47,323 bases of DNA. Origin: Guillardia theta CCMP2712 (lineage: Eukaryota; Protista; Cryptophyta). The notes under the pieces were generated by a model. That model saw only the letters and a list, made by a program, of their open reading frames with translations, searched no databases and was not told where the DNA came from. The stretch is from assembly GCF_000315625.1 (NCBI RefSeq), contig NW_005434453.1, positions 23,414-70,736 of the forward strand, in the 5' to 3' direction. The position numbers were made by a program, and so were the translations under genes. Shown in pieces: positions 22,539 through 40,756 of the stretch; within the stretch, counting starts at the first letter, position 1, and each line of letters begins with the position of its first letter.

Positions 22539-23717
22539 CTAGATGACATCGAATCTCATCGGCATCTTGAATTGCTGCAGGTGAGCAATGGCCACTTGAA
22601 AATGAGCTCCCTTGGTGACAACAACGGTGTCACCATCTGCATCACTTACATACGAAGATCATCACTTCTCGTGCTCATTGCCAATGCCAAGCGTTCTACC
22701 TGTAAGTAATCTTCATCGTCTGAAGATCCTTCGGTCCCGCCAAAGTCTACTTAACACGACAGCAGTCATGACTTGATGCTTCGGATAATGCTGGACACGA
22801 ACCTTGATTTCAGCCAGAAGGTCTTGATAAGAAGAGACCACAGTCCTCTTGATATCCGATCCAAAAGCGATCTTCACAGGCGTCTCTGAATTCAATTCCC
22901 CCCTCTCCTTGCGTTCCCTCTCCCCCTTCTCCTTGCGCTCCTTCCCCCCTCTCCTTGCGCTCCTTCTCTTGCTTCTCCTTGCGCTCCTTCTCTTGCTTCT
23001 CCTTGTGCTCCTTCTCCCCCTTCTCCTTGCGCTCCTTCTCTTCCTTCTCCTTGCGCTCCTTCTCTTGCTTCTCCTTGCGCTCCTTCTCTTCCTTCTCCTT
23101 GCGCTCCTTCTCTTCCTTCTCCTTGCGCTCCTTCTCTTCCTTCTCCTTGCGCTCCTTCTCTTCCTTCTCCTTGCGCTCCTTCTCCTCTGTCTCCTTGCGT
23201 TGCATCTCTTGCAGCCGTTTCTTGCAATGTCTGCAACCGCACTACCAACAGCACACGTCACAACAGATTCACTCGCATCACTCAAACCAATCATACACCT
23301 CGTCATAGTTACCCCATCCTTGAGCTTTGCAGCACTGAGTCAACCAATCCAATCAATACAAATATCATCTCTACAGACCATGCGCTTTGAAACATGATCG
23401 ATGACTTACATTCTGTGAGTTTCCCAGTGCATAATGTAATCAAAACAAGGTCAGATCAGCAGGAAGATATGTGATGGTGTCAATCTCTTACGCAGCACTA
23501 GTAGATCCATACCAGATGTTGCCATCCGTTGATCAAGACATACCAGAAAAAGCAAAATGAATGTCACTCCCTACCAACCGCATGTTTCAATCGAGATATT
23601 ACTTACATACTATCCAGTTCCATCACACCAGTCCATCCGAGCGAAAACAAAACAATCCCAAGATTACATGTCAGCCATATCGTCCCCTGACCGCATTTCA
23701 GCATCGTCACTTGCCCG
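22539..23717 (-). pseudogene. Gene A: microexon-encoded Cys-rich N-terminus + K/E coiled coil + PB1 domain; 5'-truncated, one frameshift
   Basis: Exons 23715-17 (R), 23607-09 (Y), 23492-97 (CC), 23410-12 (N), 23299-23334 (CCKAQGWGNYDE), then from 23241 CGCRHCKKRLQEMQRKE.... The spliced C-terminus PVKIAFGSDIKRTVVSSYQDLLAEIKTLAGPKDLQTMKITYSDADGDTVVVT...MRFDVI* has the PB1 basic Lys and acidic OPCA motif. Frameshift near 22950. Confidence 0.7.
22900..23195. repeat. 24-bp coding tandem repeat (KEKEEKER)n
   Basis: CTTCTCCTTGCGCTCCTTCTCTTC units; charged coiled-coil or single-alpha-helix-like peptide. Confidence 0.9.
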
Positions 23718-26279: not shown

Positions 26280-29200
26280 TTACACTCGACGGAACTCCAC
26301 CAGCAACTCAGGGTATGTCTGTCGGCGATCGTAGACGATGAACTCCCTGTACTTTTCCAAGCACGCTGAAGGATGCGTATCCTGTGTCACCCCAATCACT
26401 GAGTCATGCAGGCGGTCGCTGCCCGGCATTACTGGTGGTCGCCTCGCGTTGTTCATCGCTTGCAGGGCCTCGTAAGGCGTTCCCAGCACAGCTCGCACCA
26501 CAAACATACGACAGATCCCGCGGCTGTCTGGCGTGCAGTACTCGTCGCTCTTGCTCGAGTTCTCAGCTAGGTAGATCCCAGCTCCAAACAAGCCTCCTAG
26601 ACTGCAGACCCGCTCGTCAAGCCCAGCCTTCAAGATAACATCCGCCATGTCGTGTTTGGTGCCATGAAACAGAAACACCTCGTTGCTGGTCTTGTCCTGT
26701 AGGAGCGATCTCTTCATCCAATCGCTATAAGTGCGTACCTCTGTCTTGGGATGTCGTTCGCCCTGTAGCATCATAAGGTAGCCTATAACCTTTCGCTGTA
26801 GGGCATATGCCGACCACAACTCCGAGTGCTCTATACGGAAGACGCGCTCAACCTTGTAGCCTTTATGCTTCAATCCCAAGTTGTCTCTTCCTTGGCCGAT
26901 GTACTGCGGTTTACATGTTGATGTCAACAGCTCTTGTATTCTATCCTTCCACTCGCTCGTTACGTCGACTTTGATGTTTGTGCCAGCAGAGCTTGCTAGA
27001 CCCTGCCAATAGCGGGGAGGTGTAAACACGGCACAACCGTACGCAAGAAGCAGCTTCTCTGTCTCTAAATCTCTCGCTTTCTGCTCAAGTACGGCCTCTT
27101 GCTTGCTCAAGGTCGTCAGCTCCGACTGCACCTGACGCTTTTGTTCCTTCAGAAGCCGCTCTTGTGTGCTGAGCTCTGCCTTCTCCTTCGGGAGTTGCTC
27201 CTTCCTCAGGTTGAAGTGGTATTCCAGTTTCCTTCCTTGAGAGGTGAATGCTCGCTGCTGCTCCACTAGCTGCCTCTCCTCAGACTGCACGTGCTCCATG
27301 CGCTGCTTTATGTCTCTCTCCCTCTCTGCTAGTTCCTCTTGTCTCCTCATGAGCAGCGCAAGCTGTCGATCATGCTCTTCTCGCATGGCAGTGCGCTCCT
27401 TCTCGAGATGTTCGCGCTCGAGTATCATGGCATGACTGAAGTATCGATGTGTGAGAGCTTCGGCTGATGAAAGTCTCTTGCTCGGAACAGGATCGAGAAG
27501 TCTAGCAACAAGATCCTTCGCCTCGCCTTGAAGCCCAGCAAGCAAAGCCATGACGTCGTCACGATGAGTCGGTCTTATCGGAGCTTCTGTCAAGACCTCA
27601 AGCATCACCAAGCCAAACGAGTACATGTCTGATTTGTGCGAGACTTTCATCTTGCCTGTGGAAGGGTTGGTGAGCTCCGGAGCCATGTAGTTCAGCGTGC
27701 CCACGGCAAGAGCAGTGGTCACTGTAGCTGCCAACTCCCTCGCCCGGTCCTCCTGCTCCTTGGACACGTCGAAGTCTGCAATCTGCGGCTCTGCATGCTC
27801 GTCCTTGGAAGTCATCAAGATGTTTGCGGGCTTGATGTCGCAGTGGATGATCCGATTCTGACGCAGGTGCTCGAGCCCCTGCAGCACCTGCATGAGCACC
27901 CTGTGCTTCTGCTGCTCGCTCGGGTCCACATCCTGCATCCACCTACAAAGCGTTCCTCCGACAAGGAAAGGCATCTTCAGGTATCCCTTCATGACCATCG
28001 TGCGAAGCTCGATCTTCTCCTCAATAAAGGCGCTGATCAGCTTCACAATGCAAGGGTGCTCCAGGCGACGCAACATGCTTGCTTCACGTAGGAAATGTTT
28101 TCTGCCGCTCTGACAGACGGTAAGGTTGTACTCCTTGATGACATATTCCTGGCTCCCTTGACTGACGAGGATGACATTATGTCGGGCCCCCATCTGACCA
28201 ACTTGCGACAGACGATCAACGACTGTGAAAATGTCGAGCTTTTCATGCCCGATCAAAACATCACTGTCACCCGCGCCAGCCCCAGGATCTAGCTCTTCCT
28301 TCAACTCCTTCATGTATTCTGGATAGTGACAGACCACACTCCAGAGTCTTTCCTCCAACCTCTCAAGCTCCCTGGTACTTGCCATGAGCTTCACTCTGAC
28401 CACATCCGTCTTGTCCTCGATCTCCTGGCACGCCAGCTTCTTTCTCTTGCTCTTCTCAAAGTCAGATCTAAGATCATACAGCTCGTCTTCCAGATTCTCA
28501 ATTGCTTGCTTGAGCTCTGCCCGGGTGTCCATCAAACGTCGCGGGTCTTCCATACTCTGAAATGTCTTACTGTATCTTTCCAATCCTTTGACGTTTGATA
28601 TCGCACCCAGTTCAAACAACACAGTTTGTGCCCATGACAAAGCCTCTTTTTGGATTGAAAGTAAAGAGCTGAGGGGAAACGATTCGATCAAAGTCGTGTC
28701 TATCAACACCTCCTCCTCAGACACAAACGCGGCTTCAAGAGCCATGTGCGTCTCCGGAAGCACATCTTCCAGCTTGTTCTTGTCACCAATGCTCAACACA
28801 CTAACGCTTCCATCCAGCAAGCAAGACAGCTGACGAAGACTATCAGCATATCGGCTTGCGATCTTCACCCTCTCCTCCCTTGCCGATGCCAATTTCCCAT
28901 TTACCATCTCAACCCAAGCTGACACCATTGATTTTGTTTCGTTCAGCTGATACTGAAGATCATCTGTAGACAAACAGAACGGAGCTGCAGCTTTCGACCC
29001 CCTCGTATCAAGATCACAGCAGCGTAAAACTGCCTCCACGTCTGTGACAAACCTTTCCAACACTTGCTTGTACTCCAATAGGCGGGCCCGACAACCACCT
29101 TCGAGTGCAGCAACGAGCTCGTTGGATGCCTGAATCAGTGCAATCCTCGTCTCGTTCCGTCTGTTTATGCTCTCACTCTCTTGCCTGGCTCTCTGCATCA

Positions 29201-31544
29201 ACTCAGCTTGCTTGGAATCAAGCTCATCCTGCAATGACCGCACTTGACTCCAAGCCTGCTGCATACGCATGTACGCTTCGTGACCCTCGCTGCTGAATAT
29301 TTCCGTCAACTCAACCAGCAATCTGAGCGCGTCCTCTCCTGAGGCGAGCTCTTGGCTGCATATCTTCTCCGTCAGGTCGTGCAGCGACAACATCGCACGA
29401 CCATGCAGGCCCAACGACGACCCATGCCGCATGGCGACCTTGACCGCAGATCGAAGAGTGCTGCACTTGTTCATGTTTTCAGAGCGCTCCCTCTCCCGCT
29501 CATCTCTTTCCTTTTGCTCCTGCTCCTCCTGGTGTCTGGCTTGTGTGGCCTGCTCTTCTCGTTTGAGCCGTTCCTTGCAATGGCTGCATCCATACTAGCA
29601 ACATCATCCGTCAGTCGCATCAAAGACACACTTCAAGCACCTCATCGTATGCCGACCATCCTCTGGACTTGGAGCACTAAAAACCGAAGTCAATCGCCAT
29701 ATTCAGCAAAAGAGCCATCGCTCGCAATCTGCTCAGCTTACATTCTGTCATTGTTGTTTTCACCAGCAATGAAAACCAACGCAAACACAAAGTCAGGAGA
29801 GCATCAAAGAGAGTGAATAGGAAAGTCTTACACAGCACTGATGGAAAAAATAGATGTTTGAACCACAGTCATAGGATAACGCAAGACATATGTCAGTTCC
29901 TATGTCCCCTGACCGTATCTTTCATGTTTGTTACTTACATACTATCCAGCCACATTCACGACCCATGTGATGGTAATCCGAAAGAAAGACAAAACTCGTC
30001 AGTCCCTATGAACCCCTGACCGCATCTTTCATCATCGTTACTCACATGCTATCAAGCCCCATTCACGACCCGACCGATGACAAACCGAAAGAGTTGCAAA
30101 ACCAAATTTCAGCCATCGTTCCCTGACCACACCTTTCATGTTTGTTACTTACAAGCTTTCCAGCCCCATTCGTAGCCAATCCGACGATCCACAAAATTGC
30201 AAGGAACATGTCAGTCCCTATCGATCCCTGACCGCATTTTTCAATCAAGATACTCACAATCTATCCAGCCCCATTTTGTTTCACCGGGTGAAAACAAAAC
30301 ACACAAAAAGTAGATGTCAGCCATATCGTTCCCTGAGAGCATGGTACATATTTCGTCACTTACCCACTATCCAGCATCATCGACAGTCCATCCGAGAAAT
30401 AACCGATAAGATTTGCAAAATGAAATGTCAGCCAATCGTCTTCTGATCGCATCATTGAAAATGCTACTCACTCCCTATCCAGATAATCGTTTCAAATCCC
30501 GGCAAGTAACCGATGGGAGTGATTTCGTTTTCGATAAAACACGTCAGCCAATCGTCCACTCAGCACATCATATGATATGAAAAAACACTTACTCCCTTCG
30601 AAGACAGATTCCATCCAAACAAGCCAGGAAAGAGTAGCAATTGCAAATCAAATGTCAGCCAACCGTCCCTTGAGGGAATGATCGGCTTCACCGGGCAAAA
30701 CTTTGCTTCGCCAATGTGTTCTTCCTCCTTGTAAATACAATTCTTGCAGGTGCCATCTTCATCAAGATGGAAGGTCTACATGATTCGTCAGTCTTGTCGT
30801 TCCCTGATGTTTCATTATTGTTACTTACATTCTATCCAGCCACATTCATGACCCGTCCGATGAAGCACTCACAGAATTTCGATGAAAAACCCACAGATTT
30901 GCGGAAAACACGTCAGCCAAACATCCCATGACCGCATCCTTCATGATTTGTAACTCACCGTCTATTCAGTCCAATCAATGACCCATCCGATGACAAAACC
31001 GAAAAATACACCAACATTGTCAGTCAGCAAATCGTTCTTTGACCGCATTTCCATGATTGTTGCTTACCAGCTGTCCAGTCCAATCAACAGCAGATCCGAT
31101 GAAAAAACCGAAAAATGCACGAAATTCGTTAGTCCTATGGATCACTCAAGGAATGATCGGTTTTACGGGGCAAAACTTCGCTTCGCCAATGTGTTCTTCC
31201 TCCTTGTAAATACAATTCTTGCAGGTGCCATCTTCATCAAGATGGAAGGTCTACATGATTCGTCAGCCCGATCGTCCTCAAACAAGATGATTGCGAATAC
31301 TACTCACTGCCTATTCAGACAATTGTTTCCAATCCCAGCAAGCAACCGATGGGAGTGATTTTCGTTTCGAAACAAGGAAAAACATGTCAGCCAACCAACC
31401 GTCCCCTGATCGCATCTTTCATCATCCTCACTTACATTCTATCCAGCCCCATACATATCCCAACCGACGTGAACAGACCGAAAAATTCACGAAGAATGTA
31501 AGTCCCTATCGTCCCCTGACTGCATTCTTCAATCAAGATACCGC
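26280..31544 (-). CDS. Gene B: zinc-finger/microexon N-terminus + coiled coil + Ser/Thr kinase + coiled coil + PARP-family ADP-ribosyltransferase
   Basis: Main exon 26280..29594 has VIKEY, HCDIKPANIL, DFD and GTLNYMAPE (kinase) and LFHGT, GIYLAENSSKSDEY and REFIVY (PARP H-Y-E). Upstream exon 29641-29676 (CSKSRGWSAYDE) and the microexons splice in frame. Start codon not located. Confidence 0.85.
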
Positions 31545-31630
31545 CTGTAAGCCGCATAGGCATAGTGATGTCAGCAAAAGCTGTCCCTCAAGACTTACTC
31601 ATCTTACGCATCTGCTGCTGTCTTCGGTAC
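29677..31630 (-). other. Microexon/intron array 2 (14 single-codon exons, one 6-nt exon, two 84-nt zinc-finger exons)
   Basis: Each ~100-120-nt unit reads (Y/A)AG|NNN|GTRAG on the minus strand (one GTATC donor), usually with a CTGAC branch site. ZnF exons at 31167-31250 and 30692-30775. Confidence 0.8.
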
Positions 31631-32500
31631 CGGGGCAGACCTCGATCTAAAGCATCTCCAGTAAGAGGGTAATCAATCCAACACTGATGTGGTGTGATGA
31701 GGGACTAAAATGAAGGAGCAAGTGAGGACGTGCAGGAGGAAAGTCAGCATATCCATCACACATGCAGGTCAAGCAAACAAGCATCGCATCGCTTATGCTC
31801 CCTTGCCTTGCAGTCTTGACAGTTCCTCGGCATGACGGGACAGCGGAGGAAAGGCTGTTTTTTTGACCCGCAGGGAGGTGAGCAGGGGGTGGACAGGGCT
31901 CAGAGCAGGGGGTCCAGATCTGGTCCAGATGGAGTCGGGGTCGATGTGGCTCCACCAGCTATCGTGGTTACACACAAGTCTAGCATTCTTGGTGACAAAC
32001 GGGTTGAAAGGGGGCGGCTGAGTAAAACATGATGGGGACTCTAATGCCGGGCCGTCAACCTCCGGGGCCCGGGGAGCCACCTGGGGACCATCGACGCAAG
32101 TCGAGAGTCGATCTCTTAGCCCCTCGTTGACTCCTTGCCCTCATTCAAGAGAGGCCGAATCTCCTCCTCCGGCGGCGGATCTGCCGGAGCTCTTCCTGGA
32201 TGGTGATGAACTCTGAACCTCAAGGAGACGATGACATCCTGCGTGGGGGAGCAGGAGCAGGAAAGCAGGAGGCGATGGAGAGCCGGAGAAGTTGATTTAG
32301 GAAGAAGAAGCAAATCAGAGAGAAGAGACAGCGAAGGCCGGGCGGAAGCAGCTGGATACAGGACGCGGCTGATATGGTAGCGGCCATCACCAACTTGACG
32401 AGATTTGATTCATATGGGGCCCTCAGTTTGACCTGATACTTTGTTGAACACGGTCTGCTTCTGCCTCCTGACCTTGTTCCTTGCCCTGCACGTGAGCCAA

Positions 32501-33810
32501 CTCAAGCACGTCAGAGTCGACCTCTGCTCGAGCACGTCAGAGTCGTCCTCTGCTCGAGCACATCAGAGTCGTCCTCTGCTCGAGCACATCAGAGTCGACC
32601 TCTGCTCGAGCACATCAGAGTCGACCTCTGCTCGAGCACATCAGAGTCGTCCTCTGCTCGAGCACATCAGAGTCGTCCTCTGCTCAAGCACGTCAGAGTC
32701 GTCCTCTGCTCGAGCACATCAGAGTCGACCTCTGCTCGAGCACATCAGAGTCGTCCTCTGCTCAAGCACGTCAGAGTCGTCCTCTGCTCAAGCACGTCAG
32801 AGTCGTCCTCTGCTCGAGCACATCAGAGTCGTCCTCTGCTCAAGCACGTCAGAGTCGTCCTCTGCTCGAGCACATCAGAGTCGACCTCTGCTCGAGCACA
32901 TCAGAGTCGTCCTCTGCTCAAGCACGTCAGAGTCGTCCTCTGCTCAAGCACGTCAGAGTCGTCCTCTGCTCGAGCACATCAGAGTCGACCTCTGCTCGAG
33001 CACATCAGAGTCGACCTCTGCTCGAGCACATCAGAGTCGTCCTCTGCTCGAGCACATCAGAGTCGTCCTCTGCTCAAGCACGTCAGAGTCGTCCTCTGCT
33101 CGAGCACATCAGAGTCGACCTCTGCTCGAGCACATCAGAGTCGTCCTCTGCTCAAGCACGTCAGAGTCGTCCTCTGCTCAAGCACATCAGAGTCGTCCTC
33201 TGCTCGAGCACATCAGAGTCGTCCTCTGCTCAAGCACGTCAGAGTCGTCCTCTGCTCGAGCACATCAGAGTCGACCTCTGCTCGAGCACATCAGAGTCGT
33301 CCTCTGCTCAAGCACGTCAGAGTCGTCCTCTGCTCAAGCACGTCAGAGTCGTCCTCTGCTCGAGCACATCAGAGTCGACCTCTGCTCAAGCACATCAGAG
33401 TCGTCCTCTGCTCGAGCACATCAGAGTCGACCTCTGCTCAAGCACATCAGAGTCGACCTCTGCTCAAGCACATCAGAGTCGACCTCTGCTCAAGCACATC
33501 AGAGTCGACCTCTGCTCAAGCACATCAGAGTCGTCCTCTGCTCGAGCACATCAGAGTCGTCCTCTGCTCGAGCACATCAGAGTCGACCTCTGCTCGAGCA
33601 CATCAGAGTCGACCTCTGCTCGAGCACATCAGAGTCGTCCTCTGCTCGAGCACATCAGAGTCGACCTCTGCTCAAGCACATCAGAGTCGACCTCTGCTCA
33701 AGCACATCAGAGTCGTCCTCTGCTCAAGCACATCAGAGTCGACCTCTGCTCAAGCACATCAGAGTCGACCTCTGCTCAAGCACATCAGAGTCGACCTCTG
33801 CTCAAGCACA
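32501..33810. repeat. 26-bp minisatellite, ~50 units
   Basis: Unit CAGAGTCG(A/T)CCTCTGCTC(G/A)AGCAC(A/G)T. Stop-free on the + strand, producing ORF 32441..33898. Confidence 0.95.
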
Positions 33811-33898
33811 GTCAGCCAGCTGCTGTAACTTGTTCGACGATTGCGATTCGAGAGCCTTAGTTGCACCACCTGAGCCCATTGTGCATCCGAATGGTTAG

Positions 33899-37300: not shown

Positions 37301-40300
37301 TACAAGGCCCGCCTCACGATGAAGTACTGGTTCGTCTTGGCGTAGATCTGCTGCCCCCCGAAGTCCATCACGTCACACGTCAGCCCGTCAGCGTCCTCAG
37401 GCTCCCACTCGTGCAGGTCTATCCCGATCGTCCTCCTGTCTACCTCGATCTTGTCCGCCTTGTCCTTGTCTGACCTCAGAGCTCTCAGCACGCTCGTCTT
37501 GCCTGCCTCTCCGTTGCCTATGAGGATCAGGTTGATCCGCTTGTTCGCCTCGCTGTCTCTCTTGACGCTCTGCAGGTACGTGAAAGCAGCTGCCCCTCCC
37601 TGACTGGCGATCTCAGGGGGAGGCAGCTGCAGCCTGACGCAGCTCTCACACTTGACCTCCTGCAGGCTAGACTCCATGCTGCACAGCTCGTCCAAGGGAA
37701 AGTGGGAGAGGCTGGGGTTACCGGACACGTCGATGACTTTGAAAGCAACGCCGAGCTTGGAGATCCATCGAGGCAGGCTCTTCATCCTCAGATCTCGTAT
37801 CACATATCGTTTCATCCCATCTGTCCGCAAAGACATGTTGAGCGTGCCCGTCTTGCTGTCGTAGCAGCTCCCGAGCTCTCCGCCCGACAGGAGCTGCTTC
37901 ACCTCTTCGACAGCAGAGCTATCCATCTCTTGCATCCCGAAGATGTAGTGGCACTTGACTAGGTCCAGTCTCTCGGCAAACGGCTTCATCACGTTGTTAG
38001 CGTATTTGCGGAACTTCTCGATCTTGGCGATGGCGTCCTGCCTACTGGGTCTTGACGATACAAGATCTTGCTCAAGGTTGTGCACGCAGGAACGTCGATC
38101 CTTGCAGTGCTGGCACATGATTATTTGCCTTTCATCTTCAGGTTTGCCGTCGAAGTAGCAAACGCAGCACTAGAAAAAAGATCAGCCGCAACCCAGACCA
38201 TGCCAGCAAAGACCCGAATGGCAAAATACATGTCAGCCAATCATTCTCTGAGCACATCATATGATATGACACTTACTCCCTATGAAGAACGAAACAAGGA
38301 AAAACCAGGAATTTTGAAAAACAAATTCAGTCCAATCATCCCCTGACCGCATGTTTTATGACTCGTAGCTTACCAGCTGTCAAGCCCAATCAACATCCCA
38401 TCCGATGAATATACCGAAAAATACACGGAAATCGTCAGCCAGCCAATCGTTCGGAATGACCGCATCTTTTATGATTTGTCACTTACCCACTAGCCAGTCC
38501 AATGAACATCCCATCCGATACAAAAACCGTAACATACACGAAAATCGTCAGCCAGCCAATTTTCCCCTTATCCAATCTTTCATCATTGTTACTTACATCC
38601 TATCCAGCCCAATCAACATCCCATCCGACGAATAATCGAGAAAAACACAAAATTATGTCAGCCAATCGCCCCATGAATATGACCGCAAATTTCATATTCT
38701 TCACTTACTTGCTATGCAGCCCCATTCCGTCCATCCGAGCAATAACCGGTAAGATTTGCAAAATACTTGTCAGCTCAATCATTCCCGACCACATCATTCA
38801 TTTGTTACTCACTCCCTATCCAGCCCATTAAAAAACAAACAAGCCATCCGACGACAGAACCGAAAAATGAACAAAAACAGTGAGCCAATCGTCCCCTTAG
38901 CGAATGATCGGCTTTACCGGGCAAATCGCTTTGTCGATGTGATCATCTTTGTTACAGCCACACCATTCGCAGTTGTCATTGTCGTCCGGATCGAAGGTCT
39001 ATATGATTTGTCAGTCCGATCTTCCCCTGATCACATGTTTCATCAATTGTAACTTACCAGCTGTCCAGCCCAATCAACATCCCATCCGATGCAAAAACCG
39101 AAAATACACGAAAATTGTAAGCTAATCGTTCCATGACCGCATCTTTCATGATAGTTACTTACATACTATCCGGCCCAATCAACAGTCGGTGAATAACCGA
39201 GAAAAACAACAACACAAAATTTTGTCAGGCAATCGTCCCATGCATATTTTATCATCCTCACTTACCCCCTATCAAGCCCCATTCACAATCCAGCCGATAC
39301 AAAGACCAAAAAACGCAAATCCACATGTGAGCCAATCTTTCCCGATATTTGAAGATGGTTACTTACATCCTGTGCAAGCCCCAATCGTAGCAAATCCGAT
39401 GAGAACCCGATAAAATCACAAGGTACACGTCAAATCCCTATCGTCCCCTGACCGCATCTTTCATTATTGTTACTTACATTCTATTCAGCCACATTCATGA
39501 CCCATCCGATGAGACACCACAAAAGTGCAAAGAACACGTCAGCCATATCGTCCCCTGACCGCATTTCATCATCGTTACTTACCCGCTATACCGCCCCATC
39601 CACAGCACATTCGAGCAAATACCGACACATACACAAAATAAATGTCAGTCCAATCATCCCCTTCCTGACCGCACCTTTCATCATCGTTACTTACCCGCTA
39701 TACCGCCCCATCCACAGTACATTCGAGCAAATACCGACACATACACAAAATGATTGTCAGTCCAATCATCCCCTTACCGCATGTTTTATGACTCGTAGCT
39801 TACCAGCTATCAAGCCCAATCAACATCCCATCCGATGAAAATACCGAAAAATGAACGAAAATCGTCAGCAAGCCAATACCGCATCTTTTACGATTTGTGA
39901 CTTACCCGCTATTCAGCCTCATTCACAACCCAGCCGATGAACACCCACAAGATTTGCAAAGCTACATGTCAGTTCAATCATTATCTGAGCGAACGGATGC
40001 TTACGTAGCAGAACTTTCTATCTGTGAGGTGCTCTTGTTCAAGCTTCGAACAGGTCGCACACCGTCCTTGGGCTCCAGCTTTGAAGGTAGCCTGTTGTAG
40101 AATATTAACCCAATTGTTCCCTGACCGCATCTTTCATCATTGTTACTTACATCCTATCCAGCCCAATCAATAACCCATCGGATGATAAACCGAAAAATGC
40201 ACGAAAATCGTAAGCCAGTCAGTCGTCCCCTGACCGCATCCTTCATGATCGTGACTTACCAGCTGTCAAGCCCAATCAATGACCCATCCGATGAAAAACC

Positions 40301-40756
40301 GAGAAAAATACACCAATATTGTCAGCCAGCAAATCGATCCCTGACCGCATCATATGGTATGACACTTACTGCCTATGAAGACAGATTCCATCAAAACAAG
40401 CCAAGAAAGAGTAGCAATTGCAAAGCAAATGTCAGCCAACCATCCCCTGACCGCATCTTTCATGATTGGTCACTTACATCCTATCCAGTCCAGTCAACAA
40501 CCCATTCGATGAGAAAACCGAAAAATATACGAAAAATGTCGGTCAATCGTTCCTTGATGTCAGCATCGTTGCAAATGTTACTCACTCCCTATCCAGACCA
40601 TTGTTTCCAATCCCAGCAACAAAACGATGGAAGTTGAGAAAAGAAAGCACGTCAGCCAGCGAATTGTCCCGATGATAAACCCAAAAAATTACAAAGAGCA
40701 TGTCAGTCTAATCGTTCACTGAACGAGCATATGCTGCACAGACTGATGCTTACCGC
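34303..40756 (-). CDS. Gene C: zinc-finger/microexon N-terminus + LRR + Roc GTPase + COR + CxxC region + TIR (Roco-TIR)
   Basis: Main exon 34303..38169 starts CCVCYFDG.... It has a few LRRs (IDVSGNPSLSHFP), GNGEAGKTS, RRTIGID, DFGGQ, ATHID, COR (FLHDMGVL, IDPVW) and TIR (VFLSYQW, CWFD, FVVFMSDKYVKSGNCRREF, IIPV). Microexons splice in frame. Start uncertain. Confidence 0.9.

What the first reader, a model, noticed from the sequence alone, without database searches (positions are those of the whole stretch)
29595..31630. Second single-codon microexon array splices in frame into a kinase-PARP gene
Seen, in transcript order: 31542-44 GCG, 31436-38 AAT, 31308-10 GCA, [31167-31250 TFHLDEDGTCKNCIYKEEEHIGEAKFCP], 31068-70 CTG, 30959-61 ACG, 30829-31 AAT, [30692-30775 same ZnF peptide], 30593-95 GGA, 30472-74 GGA, 30364-66 TGG, 30258-60 ATT, 30153-55 CTT, 30046-48 CAT, 29939-41 TAT, 29832-37 TGCTGT, 29742-44 AAT, 29641-76 CSKSRGWSAYDE, then from 29594 YGCSHCKERLKREEQ..., in frame with ATG 29474. 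Predicted: ANA-ZnF-LTN-ZnF-GGWILHYCCNCSKSRGWSAYDEYGCSHCKER. The same architecture sits on a completely different effector, which argues for a reusable module.
Basis: partly seen in the sequence, partly recalled or inferred. Interest (0 to 1): 0.93.

Follow-up and report, generated by a model that had tools for sequence, protein, structure and literature searches.

The report
One-codon exon array, kinase-PARP gene
In the alga Guillardia theta, a kinase-PARP gene appears to encode part of its cysteine-rich N-terminus one codon per exon; RNA shows such 3-base exons spliced in order in a sister kinase-PARP gene and in the neighbouring gene, but this copy had no RNA coverage.

Summary

I read it as a real chain of fifteen 3-nt exons, one 6-nt exon, two 84-nt CCHC exons and one 36-nt exon.
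- exon 1, ATG at 31833, peptide MPRNCQDCK
- exon 2, 31646-31608

Main evidence:
- **No stop codons.** The genome has 212 such triplets and none is a stop; 15.3 were expected (P about 1e-7).
- **RNA from a sister gene.** A G. theta transcript contig of a paralogous kinase-PARP gene carries 12 one-codon exons plus the 6-nt exon joined in genomic order.
- **RNA from this window.** Contigs from an RNA run join one-codon exons of the other array in this window.
- **Different effectors.** The same module precedes Roc-COR-TIR, kinase-PARP, kinase and kinase-RING genes.

This copy had no RNA coverage, so its own splicing is inferred. The scan had already noted such arrays on other pieces of this genome. 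I found no paper describing them.

The parts
31807..31833 (-). Inferred exon 1 with the start codon (ATG 31833-31831), peptide MPRNCQDCK. It is followed by GCAAGG, a possible GC 5' splice site. An alternative in-frame GT site lies at 31761.
   Evidence: The homologous 27-nt exon 1 (MPVQCSECE) of the C29 paralog is joined to exon 2 in transcript L040.
31608..31646 (-). Inferred exon 2, 39 nt, peptide IEVCPGTEDSSRC, bounded by ttag| and |gtaaga.
   Evidence: The exon is conserved in at least 13 paralogous loci. It is present and spliced in L040 (VYIERGTSDSSKC).
31542..31544 (-). 3-nt exon GCG (Ala), the constant first codon of the arrays. Its 5' splice site here is the weaker GTATCT.
   Evidence: GCG directly follows exon 2 in L040.
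31436..31438 (-). 3-nt exon AAT
31308..31310 (-). 3-nt exon GCA
31167..31250 (-). 84-nt phase-0 exon with a CCHC pattern (C-x2-C-x6-H-x6-C), copy 1
   Evidence: There are 12 matches genome-wide (11 examined, in 7 array loci); all 11 keep Cys/His and eight have clear ag|..|gt borders.
31068..31070 (-). 3-nt exon CTG
30959..30961 (-). 3-nt exon ACG
30829..30831 (-). 3-nt exon AAT
30692..30775 (-). 84-nt CCHC exon, copy 2. It encodes the same peptide as copy 1; the two DNA differences I read by eye are both synonymous.
30593..30595 (-). 3-nt exon GGA (3' splice site gaag)
30472..30474 (-). 3-nt exon GGA
30364..30366 (-). 3-nt exon TGG
30258..30260 (-). 3-nt exon ATT
30153..30155 (-). 3-nt exon CTT (3' splice site aaag)
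30046..30048 (-). 3-nt exon CAT
29939..29941 (-). 3-nt exon TAT
29832..29837 (-). 6-nt exon TGCTGT (Cys-Cys), a constant element near the end of the kinase-type arrays
   Evidence: The homologous TGTTGT is spliced onto the chain in L040.
29742..29744 (-). 3-nt exon AAT (Asn), a constant element
   Evidence: AAT is joined to the 36-nt exon in L040.
29641..29676 (-). 36-nt exon, peptide CSKSRGWSAYDE
   Evidence: The peptide is conserved in 8 paralogs while codon choice differs between copies. The same exon border is seen in transcripts L034 and L040.
26280..29594 (-). Last exon, 1104 codons plus stop. It begins YGCSHCKER and holds a protein kinase domain and a PARP catalytic domain whose HGT / GIY / EFIVYD motifs look like an H-Y-E triad (read by eye).
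   Evidence: The only public model found on this contig for this gene is a 214-aa fragment.
39266..39814 (-). Part of the other array in this window (Roc-COR-TIR gene GUITHDRAFT_121310). A contig of run X6 joins the one-codon exons CTG 39806, CGG 39697, CGG 39585 and AAT 39480; its piece spacing implies that GAT 39369 and GGG 39268 are joined too.
   Evidence: (record 6 and its loose end). The joined form is absent from the genome.

Best explanation
The region 29595-31833 (minus strand) is the 5' part of an intact Guillardia theta kinase-PARP gene. Its cysteine-rich N-terminal module is encoded by very short phase-0 exons:
- exon 1 (27 nt, CxxC)
- exon 2 (39 nt)
- fifteen 3-nt exons and one 6-nt exon, interrupted by two 84-nt CCHC exons
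- a 36-nt exon, then the 3.3-kb kinase-PARP exon

All the introns between the exons of the array belong to one repeat family. Its consensus has a GTAAGT 5' site, a CTGAC branch site, and the 3' end GGCTGGATAG.

In front of a 3-nt exon the intron is about 104 nt. Its branch A sits a near-constant 59 nt from the 3' splice site, and an AG-free spacer fills the gap. In front of an 84-nt exon the same intron lacks that spacer and the branch A is 12 nt away.

I infer that the spacer stands in for exon length. It keeps the branch site of one intron about 60 nt from the 5' splice site of the next, so both can be recognised despite a 3-nt exon. Each intron is then removed individually by ordinary GT-AG splicing.

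The product is a short peptide rich in Tyr, Gly, Leu, Arg, Asp, Asn and Trp. It is framed by constant Cys-bearing ends, ..[KR]C-A at the start and CC-N-C..GW..C..CK at the end. Paralogs differ in both the number and the identity of the codons.

I infer that this is a variable, probably zinc-clamped, recognition segment placed in front of signalling or cell-death type effectors.

What is shown and what is inferred:
- **Shown:** the anatomy, the frame, the absence of stops, conservation of the spliced motif, and RNA splicing of one-codon exons in a kinase-PARP paralog and in two Roc-COR-TIR arrays.
- **Inferred:** splicing of this copy, the spacing mechanism, zinc binding and a recognition role.
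For: **Anatomy and frame.**

**Organism.** The neighbouring ORF is 100% identical to GUITHDRAFT_121310 of G. theta CCMP2712.

**Coding constraint.**
- 232 of 254 chained spacers are 3 nt and 14 are 6 nt.
- None of 212 strictly defined triplets is a stop, against 15.3 expected from position-specific base composition (P = 1.3e-7).
- Counting TAA and TGA only, my arithmetic on the frequencies gives about 9 expected (P about 1e-4).

**The spliced motif is real.**
- CC|N|C[AS]K..GW..Y[DE].|YGC.HCK is conserved in 8 paralogs, while codon choice differs between copies.
- It is contiguous in the Roc-COR-TIR exon from 38169.
- It is contiguous in Hanusia phi transcript protein P0004.
- It is contiguous in marine contigs L038 and L039.

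**Direct RNA evidence.**
- Transcript contig L040 matches contig C29 at 100% over its two longest exon blocks (96% and 93% over two short ones). It reads exon 1 | exon 2 | A Y R W A R N L R E A R | CC | (one retained intron) | N | 36-nt exon | kinase-PARP ORF. In the genome the 14 short exons lie in that same order, 77-198 nt apart.
- Record 5 of run X6 joins nine consecutive triplets of the array in L028.
- Record 6 of run X6 joins CTG-CGG-CGG-AAT of the other array in this window; its piece spacing (114 nt = intron 108 + 3 + 3) implies GAT-GGG is joined too.
- Neither joined form that I could read exists as DNA in the genome.

**Intron design.**
- The branch A lies a median 59 nt (IQR 57-60) from the 3' splice site in the 150 of 169 microexon introns that have a CTRAY match; the AG-free stretch has a median of 71 nt over all 169.
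- The branch A lies 12 nt away before the 84-nt exons.

**Variability.** The codon differs 5-6 times more per site than its 70 nt of flanks, and almost all changes alter the amino acid.

**Reuse.** Arrays precede Roc-COR-TIR, kinase-PARP, kinase and kinase-RING bodies.
Against: - There is no RNA evidence for this copy. Depth was zero over 28000-29474 in the four runs laid. Only about 6% of the one raw-read run was read, and the others are contig sets.
- X6 is RNA only by the tool's guess. The argument that it holds RNA rests on the joined forms being absent from the genome.
- The first GCG has a weak 5' site (GTATCT).
- Exon 1 would need a GC 5' splice site, or else the GT at 31761.
- Two introns lack a CTRAY branch match.
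- The units are related by duplication, so the 212 triplets are not fully independent.
- Zinc binding and a recognition role have no direct support. Pfam and the ESM Atlas gave nothing for the small modules.
Confidence: 0.8

Rival explanations
1. This copy is a silent or decaying paralog. The array is a relic of a once-spliced module and the gene is no longer made into protein.
For: RNA depth over its kinase-PARP exon was zero in the four runs, while sister arrays are visible in run X6. The first microexon has a weak 5' site, exon 1 lacks a GT at the homologous position, and two introns lack a CTRAY branch match.
Against: The 1104-codon last exon is open and has full kinase and PARP domains above Pfam cut-offs. 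All 19 reader pieces keep AG/GT borders and none has a stop. The two DNA differences I read by eye between the duplicated 84-nt exons are both synonymous. The RNA sampling was shallow, and the tool itself says a hole proves nothing.
Confidence: 0.12
2. The triplets are optional cassettes. Because any subset of 3-nt exons keeps the frame, skipping produces many isoforms from one gene, and the fully included chain is only one of them.
For: All array exons are phase 0 and multiples of 3. The splice contexts are near-identical repeats. Partly spliced molecules show that introns are not removed in strict order.
Against: Every joined form I could read includes all the intervening triplets of the genome: nine in L028, four in the other array of this window, and twelve plus the 6-nt exon in C29. 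No skipped form was seen, but contigs drop rare variants and I could not lay raw reads on those loci.
Confidence: 0.25
3. The array is non-coding: a repeat-filled 5' intron or UTR that is removed as a whole. The 3-nt spacing would then be only a by-product of duplicating one unit.
For: The units are clearly tandem duplicates. Public gene models skip the arrays.
Against: None of 212 triplets is a stop, against 15.3 expected. Spacer length is fixed at 3 or 6 nt while intron lengths vary from 87 to 127 nt. The joined triplets are present in RNA-derived contigs. The spliced ends rebuild a conserved motif.
Confidence: 0.03

Closest known systems
Micro-exon genes (MEGs) of Schistosoma mansoni
   Same: The coding sequence is built from runs of very short symmetric exons (3-81 bp according to PMC10526429). 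The encoded proteins are highly variable, and the exons being multiples of 3 allows in-frame variation.
   Different: - MEG exons are separated by long, unrelated introns (up to 5 kb) and make up most of a small secreted protein.
- Here nearly all array exons are exactly one codon, and the introns are about 105-nt copies of one repeat family with a fixed distant branch point.
- The array encodes only the N-terminal module of large proteins that carry Roc-COR-TIR or kinase-PARP bodies.
- There is no sequence relationship between the two.
Isolated 3-nt microexons of animals and plants (for example cytohesin-1, PMC6314551; plant microexons, PMC8831610)
   Same: A single codon is recognised as an exon by the ordinary spliceosome, and annotation commonly misses it.
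   Different: Those are single exons, or at most small clusters, in otherwise ordinary genes. They are not tandem arrays of up to about 20 with dedicated repeat introns.
Recursive splice sites (juxtaposed AG|GTAAGT 'zero-length exons') of long Drosophila and vertebrate introns (from my own knowledge, not tested here)
   Same: A 3' splice site lies directly next to a 5' splice site, and a long region is removed stepwise.
   Different: Here 3 nt are kept at each step and become coding sequence. The introns are short.
Introner / introner-like elements (repeat families of introns in Micromonas, Aureococcus and fungi; from my own knowledge)
   Same: Many introns in one genome share one sequence.
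   Different: Introners are dispersed singly in unrelated genes. These copies are tandem, confined to about 25-30 loci of one N-terminal module, and each carries a codon.

Membership tests
Protein kinase - PARP fusion proteins (Pfam PF00069 + PF00644) | Both domains score above the Pfam gathering cut-offs in one reading frame | tested here: met
   Pkinase scores 133.9 bits (cut-off 31.7) and PARP 72.2 bits (cut-off 26.7) in the ORF 26280-29474. Full-length relatives occur in Hanusia phi and Naegleria.
Protein kinase - PARP fusion proteins (Pfam PF00069 + PF00644) | PARP catalytic H-Y-E triad | tested here: inconclusive
   HGT, GIY and EFIVYD motifs are visible in the C-terminus. I read them by eye and did not align them to a solved PARP.
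G. theta one-codon exon arrays (this genome's own family) | Tandem units of about 105 nt, each a GTRAGT..CTGAC..59 nt..YAG intron plus a 3-nt spacer | tested here: met
G. theta one-codon exon arrays (this genome's own family) | Constant ends: exon 2 ..[KR]C, then GCG, and TGCTGY / AAT / 36-nt exon / YGC.HCK at the 3' end | tested here: met
G. theta one-codon exon arrays (this genome's own family) | The triplets are joined in order in RNA | tested here: inconclusive
   Met for the C29 kinase-PARP paralog, for the array in L028 and for the other array in this window. There was no RNA coverage of this copy.
Schistosoma-type micro-exon genes | Most of the coding sequence lies in short symmetric exons | tested here: not met
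   About 320 nt of coding sequence lie in short exons against 3312 nt in one large exon.
Schistosoma-type micro-exon genes | Isoform variation through exon skipping | not testable with these tools
Contigs show only full inclusion.
Introner elements | Near-identical introns dispersed singly through unrelated genes | tested here: not met
   Most hits of the junction motif fall in tandem clusters, with about eight lone hits. The arrays examined precede genes that share one N-terminal module.
Intron-encoded box C/D snoRNA clusters | Conserved C/D boxes, or a match to an Rfam family | tested here: not met
   No Rfam match at gathering score in the whole window. The ATGATGA-like stretch is not conserved in the intron alignment.

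The most novel reading that the evidence does not exclude
The arrays are a diversity-generating device for intracellular immune or cell-death receptors of a unicellular alga. A zinc-clamped loop would be written one codon per exon, so that unequal crossing-over between the repeat introns (over evolutionary time) and combinatorial skipping of frame-neutral exons (within a cell) can vary loop length and sequence. The effector stays intact throughout. The intron's 47-nt spacer would be a specific adaptation that makes 3-nt exons spliceable.
Probability: 0.25. Interest if true: 0.95.

Novelty: new variant of a known kind. Interest (0 to 1): 0.85.

Why it matters
- **A limit case for splicing.** Exons of one codon, chained up to about 20 in a row, sit at the lower limit of what a spliceosome must recognise. 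The fixed 59-nt distance from branch point to 3' splice site suggests a simple, testable rule for how that limit is overcome.
- **A possible receptor-diversification system.** The arrays sit in front of Roc-COR-TIR and kinase-PARP genes and their codons change much faster than their flanks. This points to an unrecognised way of diversifying receptor-like proteins in a protist.
- **Annotation.** The public G. theta models seen for the array genes examined (P0121-P0123, P0147) miss the arrays. The model for the neighbouring gene starts inside an intron, and this gene has only a 214-aa fragment model. The real N-termini of a whole gene family are therefore absent from protein databases.

Tried and rejected
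- **RNA at this locus.** I laid reads on 28000-32490 (4491 letters, within the operators' limit) from one raw RNA run and three contig sets. Depth over the kinase-PARP exon was zero. The few pieces that landed were 23-46-nt matches from paralogous arrays. This says nothing about splicing of this copy.
- **N-terminal word search.** A search with the N-terminal 420 residues found nothing, probably because Glu/Lys/Arg-rich words swamped it.
- **Metagenome scan for the spliced junction.** The pattern TGCTGY-AAY-TGY..GGNTGG returned only two marine contigs from another organism, and no G. theta transcript. The tool says records of this genome may be left out.
- **Small Cys modules.** Pfam gave no family for the 28-aa CCHC exon, for the contiguous CC.C..C.HCK module, for the Hanusia N-terminus or for the 44-aa marine ORF. 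The ESM Atlas gave no usable hit.
- **snoRNA host-gene idea.** I rejected it.
- **A conserved intron hairpin bringing the branch point near the 3' site.** RNAalifold gave only a 4-bp stem at -0.85 kcal/mol with no covariation.
- **ATG at 31611.** I first read this as a start codon. Paralogs show it is the AGA-TGC end of exon 2.
- **Transcript L034.** It is only 68-73% identical to this genome, so it comes from another cryptophyte. It supports only the 36-nt exon border.
Full report
**Observation.** On the minus strand between 29742 and 31544 there is a tandem series of units about 105 nt long. Each unit ends in ..GGCTGGATAG, then has three bases, then GTRAGT.
- Joined, the pieces give ANA-[28-aa exon]-LTN-[same 28-aa exon]-GGWILHY-CC-N-CSKSRGWSAYDE-YGCSHCKER.., with no stop.
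- The chain stays in frame with a 1104-codon open frame that holds a protein kinase domain and a PARP catalytic domain.
- The junction motif occurs 90 times in the 87-Mb genome against once for the reversed control, in about 25 clusters.
- A longer array (38277-40588) precedes the neighbouring Roc-COR-TIR gene. A short one (about 23707-23410) precedes a third gene.

**Organism.** The Roc-COR-TIR frame is 100% identical to GUITHDRAFT_121310 of Guillardia theta CCMP2712, on a contig of 70,736 nt. Earlier scan notes named the species; this call verifies it.

**Gene model.** Paralogous loci share two exons upstream of the arrays. In this gene they are:
- Exon 2, 31646-31608 (IEVCPGTEDSSRC). The 'ATG' at 31611 is only the AGA-TGC at its end.
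- Exon 1, from ATG 31833 (MPRNCQDCK).

In the paralog on contig C29, exon 1 is also 27 nt (MPVQCSECE|gtgctg), and a transcript shows its junction to exon 2. In the window the homologous position reads GCAAGG. Either a GC 5' site is used there, or the in-frame GT at 31761 is used. I cannot tell which.

The only public model found for this gene is a 214-aa kinase fragment. The public model of the neighbouring gene starts at an ATG inside the last array intron (MYFAIR|CCVC..).

**Are the triplets coding?** I fetched 25 other array loci.
- Of 254 chained spacers, 232 are 3 nt and 14 are 6 nt (all TGCTGY). The few other lengths are 7-15 nt; at least one (13 nt) looks like the end of a longer exon.
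- Among 212 strictly defined triplets there is no TAA, TAG or TGA, against 15.3 expected from position-specific base composition (P = 1.3e-7).
- TAG might be avoided for splicing reasons. Counting only TAA and TGA, about 9 are still expected (my arithmetic on the frequencies; P about 1e-4).
- Intron lengths vary from 87 to 127 nt, while the spacer length does not vary.
- The encoded residues are dominated by Tyr, Gly, Leu, Arg, Asp, Ala, Asn and Trp.

**The spliced ends rebuild a real motif.** In eight paralogs the sequence TGCTGY | AAT | 36-nt exon | next exon encodes CC-N-C[AS]K..GW..Y[DE].-YGC.HCK, while codon choice differs between copies. The same motif is contiguous elsewhere:
- In the Roc-COR-TIR exon that begins at 38169 (CCVCYFDG..MCQHCKDR), upstream of and in frame with its internal ATG.
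- In a Hanusia phi transcript protein, the only full-length representative of this kinase-PARP family. Its N-terminus is MDDTIC-FDRIGSE-CHCAKKCGWSDYNTDACSECK.
- In two marine contigs that encode a 44-aa ORF with ..FCCNCAKAKGWPEFDADACRQCKER.

The 84-nt exon has 12 matches genome-wide; the 11 I examined lie in 7 array loci. All 11 keep C-x2-C-x6-H-x6-C, and eight have clear splice borders.

**RNA.** The gene itself had no coverage. Three other lines show one-codon exons joined in RNA.

(a) *A kinase-PARP paralog on contig C29.* The protein cluster of P0001 contains G. theta models and a 1080-aa product of a JGI transcript contig, L040.
- L040 matches contig C29 at 100% over its two longest exon blocks, and at 96% and 93% over two short ones.
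- Its first 220 nt read ..CSECE|VYIERGTSDSSKC|A Y R W A R N L R E A R|CC|(retained 87-nt intron)|N|CLKISGWPDYDE|DGCELCK.., and then continue into the kinase-PARP frame.
- In the genome the same codons lie in the same order, one every 77-198 nt, each between AG and GT: GCG 208412, TAT 208503, CGG 208604, TGG 208756, GCG 208849, CGG 208943, AAC 209040, CTG 209153, CGA 209253, GAA 209351, GCG 209549, CGG 209651, TGTTGT 209728 and AAT 209821.

(b) *The array in L028.* A loose end of one X6 contig is the reverse complement of TTT-TCG-GAA-CAC-TTC-TCG-TAT-AAA-CCG. These are the nine triplets that follow TGG in that array.

(c) *The other array in this window.* Another X6 contig reads cttgatag|CTG|CGG|CGG|AAT|gtaagtaac... 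A further 114 nt on (intron 108 + GAT + GGG) it continues with gtaagtgagg... That is a partly spliced RNA of the other array in this window.

Neither of the two joined forms I could read exists in the genome, even allowing 2 mismatches.

The partly spliced molecules show that the introns are removed individually and not in strict 5'-to-3' order.

**Intron design.**
- The consensus intron is 104 nt.
- In the 150 of 169 introns between adjacent 3-nt exons that have a CTRAY match, the branch A lies a median 59 nt (IQR 57-60) from the 3' site. The AG-free stretch has a median of 71 nt over all 169.
- Introns in front of the 84-nt exons keep the same 5' half but end 12 nt after the branch A, for a total of 53-57 nt.
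- I infer that the extra spacer keeps the branch site about 60 nt from the next 5' splice site. This would avoid the steric clash that, by established knowledge of mini-exon splicing, makes exons under about 50 nt hard to define. This inference is not tested.
- No Rfam family and no conserved intron fold were found.

**Variability and reuse.**
- Between units whose 70 nt of flanks are at least 90% identical, the codon differs at 0.42 per site against 0.066 for the flanks. Of the differing codons, 69 of 71 change the amino acid. The pairs are not independent, and the flanks include constrained splice signals.
- Paralogous arrays differ in the number and identity of their codons but keep the constant GCG start and CC-N end.
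- The array-bearing module precedes Roc-COR-TIR, kinase-PARP, kinase and kinase-RING bodies.

**Literature.** Five full-text searches found isolated 3-nt microexons in animals and plants and the Schistosoma micro-exon genes. None described tandem one-codon exons, and none linked microexons with Guillardia or cryptophytes.

**Earlier scan notes.** The scan had already noted the same architecture on other pieces of this genome. The evidence cited here is from my own calls.

**Verdict.** Splicing of this particular copy still has to be shown.

Noticed in passing
window 32501-33815: A 26-nt unit is repeated about 50 times at 95% identity, in the spacer between the Roc-COR-TIR gene's 3' end and the kinase-PARP gene's start. 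The period is not a multiple of 3, so it is probably a non-coding minisatellite.
   Followed up: no
window 23150-23710 (minus strand): A third, short array: CGG (followed by GCAAGT), TAT, TGCTGC, AAT, a 36-nt exon (CCKAQGWGNYDE), then CGCRHCKKRLQEMQ.. This runs into a 24-nt coding tandem repeat rich in Glu and Lys (22904-23210). It is the start of a third gene with the same module.
   Followed up: partly
window 38169-38245 (minus strand): The public model GUITHDRAFT_121310 starts MYFAIR at an ATG inside the last array intron and is spliced to CCVC... Two sister models start at the internal MCQHCK. Public proteins therefore lack the array-encoded N-termini.
   Followed up: partly
L038 720-851 and L039 (marine metagenome contigs Ga0209713_10180998 and Ga0115006_10260458): A stand-alone 44-aa ORF carries the contiguous CCNCAKAKGW..C..CKER motif, in an unidentified marine organism. 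The motif therefore exists outside the Guillardia arrays.
   Followed up: partly
window 31801-31806 and 23712-23717; L019 and L024: GCAAG[GT] sits where paralogs have a GT 5' splice site: after exon 1, and after one CGG triplet. These may be GC-AG introns in this family.
   Followed up: partly
window about 40040-40130 (minus strand), array 1: A 13-nt 'spacer' (AAAGTTCTGCTAC) in the chain looks like the end of a second type of CCHC exon (..GSSKFCY|gtaagg), which is also seen in L010, L017 and L027.
   Followed up: no
L034 1-150 (JGI 3300017027 transcript contig from another cryptophyte): This transcript keeps the intron between a ..TDYDQ exon and the YACGHC exon. The 36-nt exon border is therefore shared with a species only about 70% identical in DNA.
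   Followed up: partly
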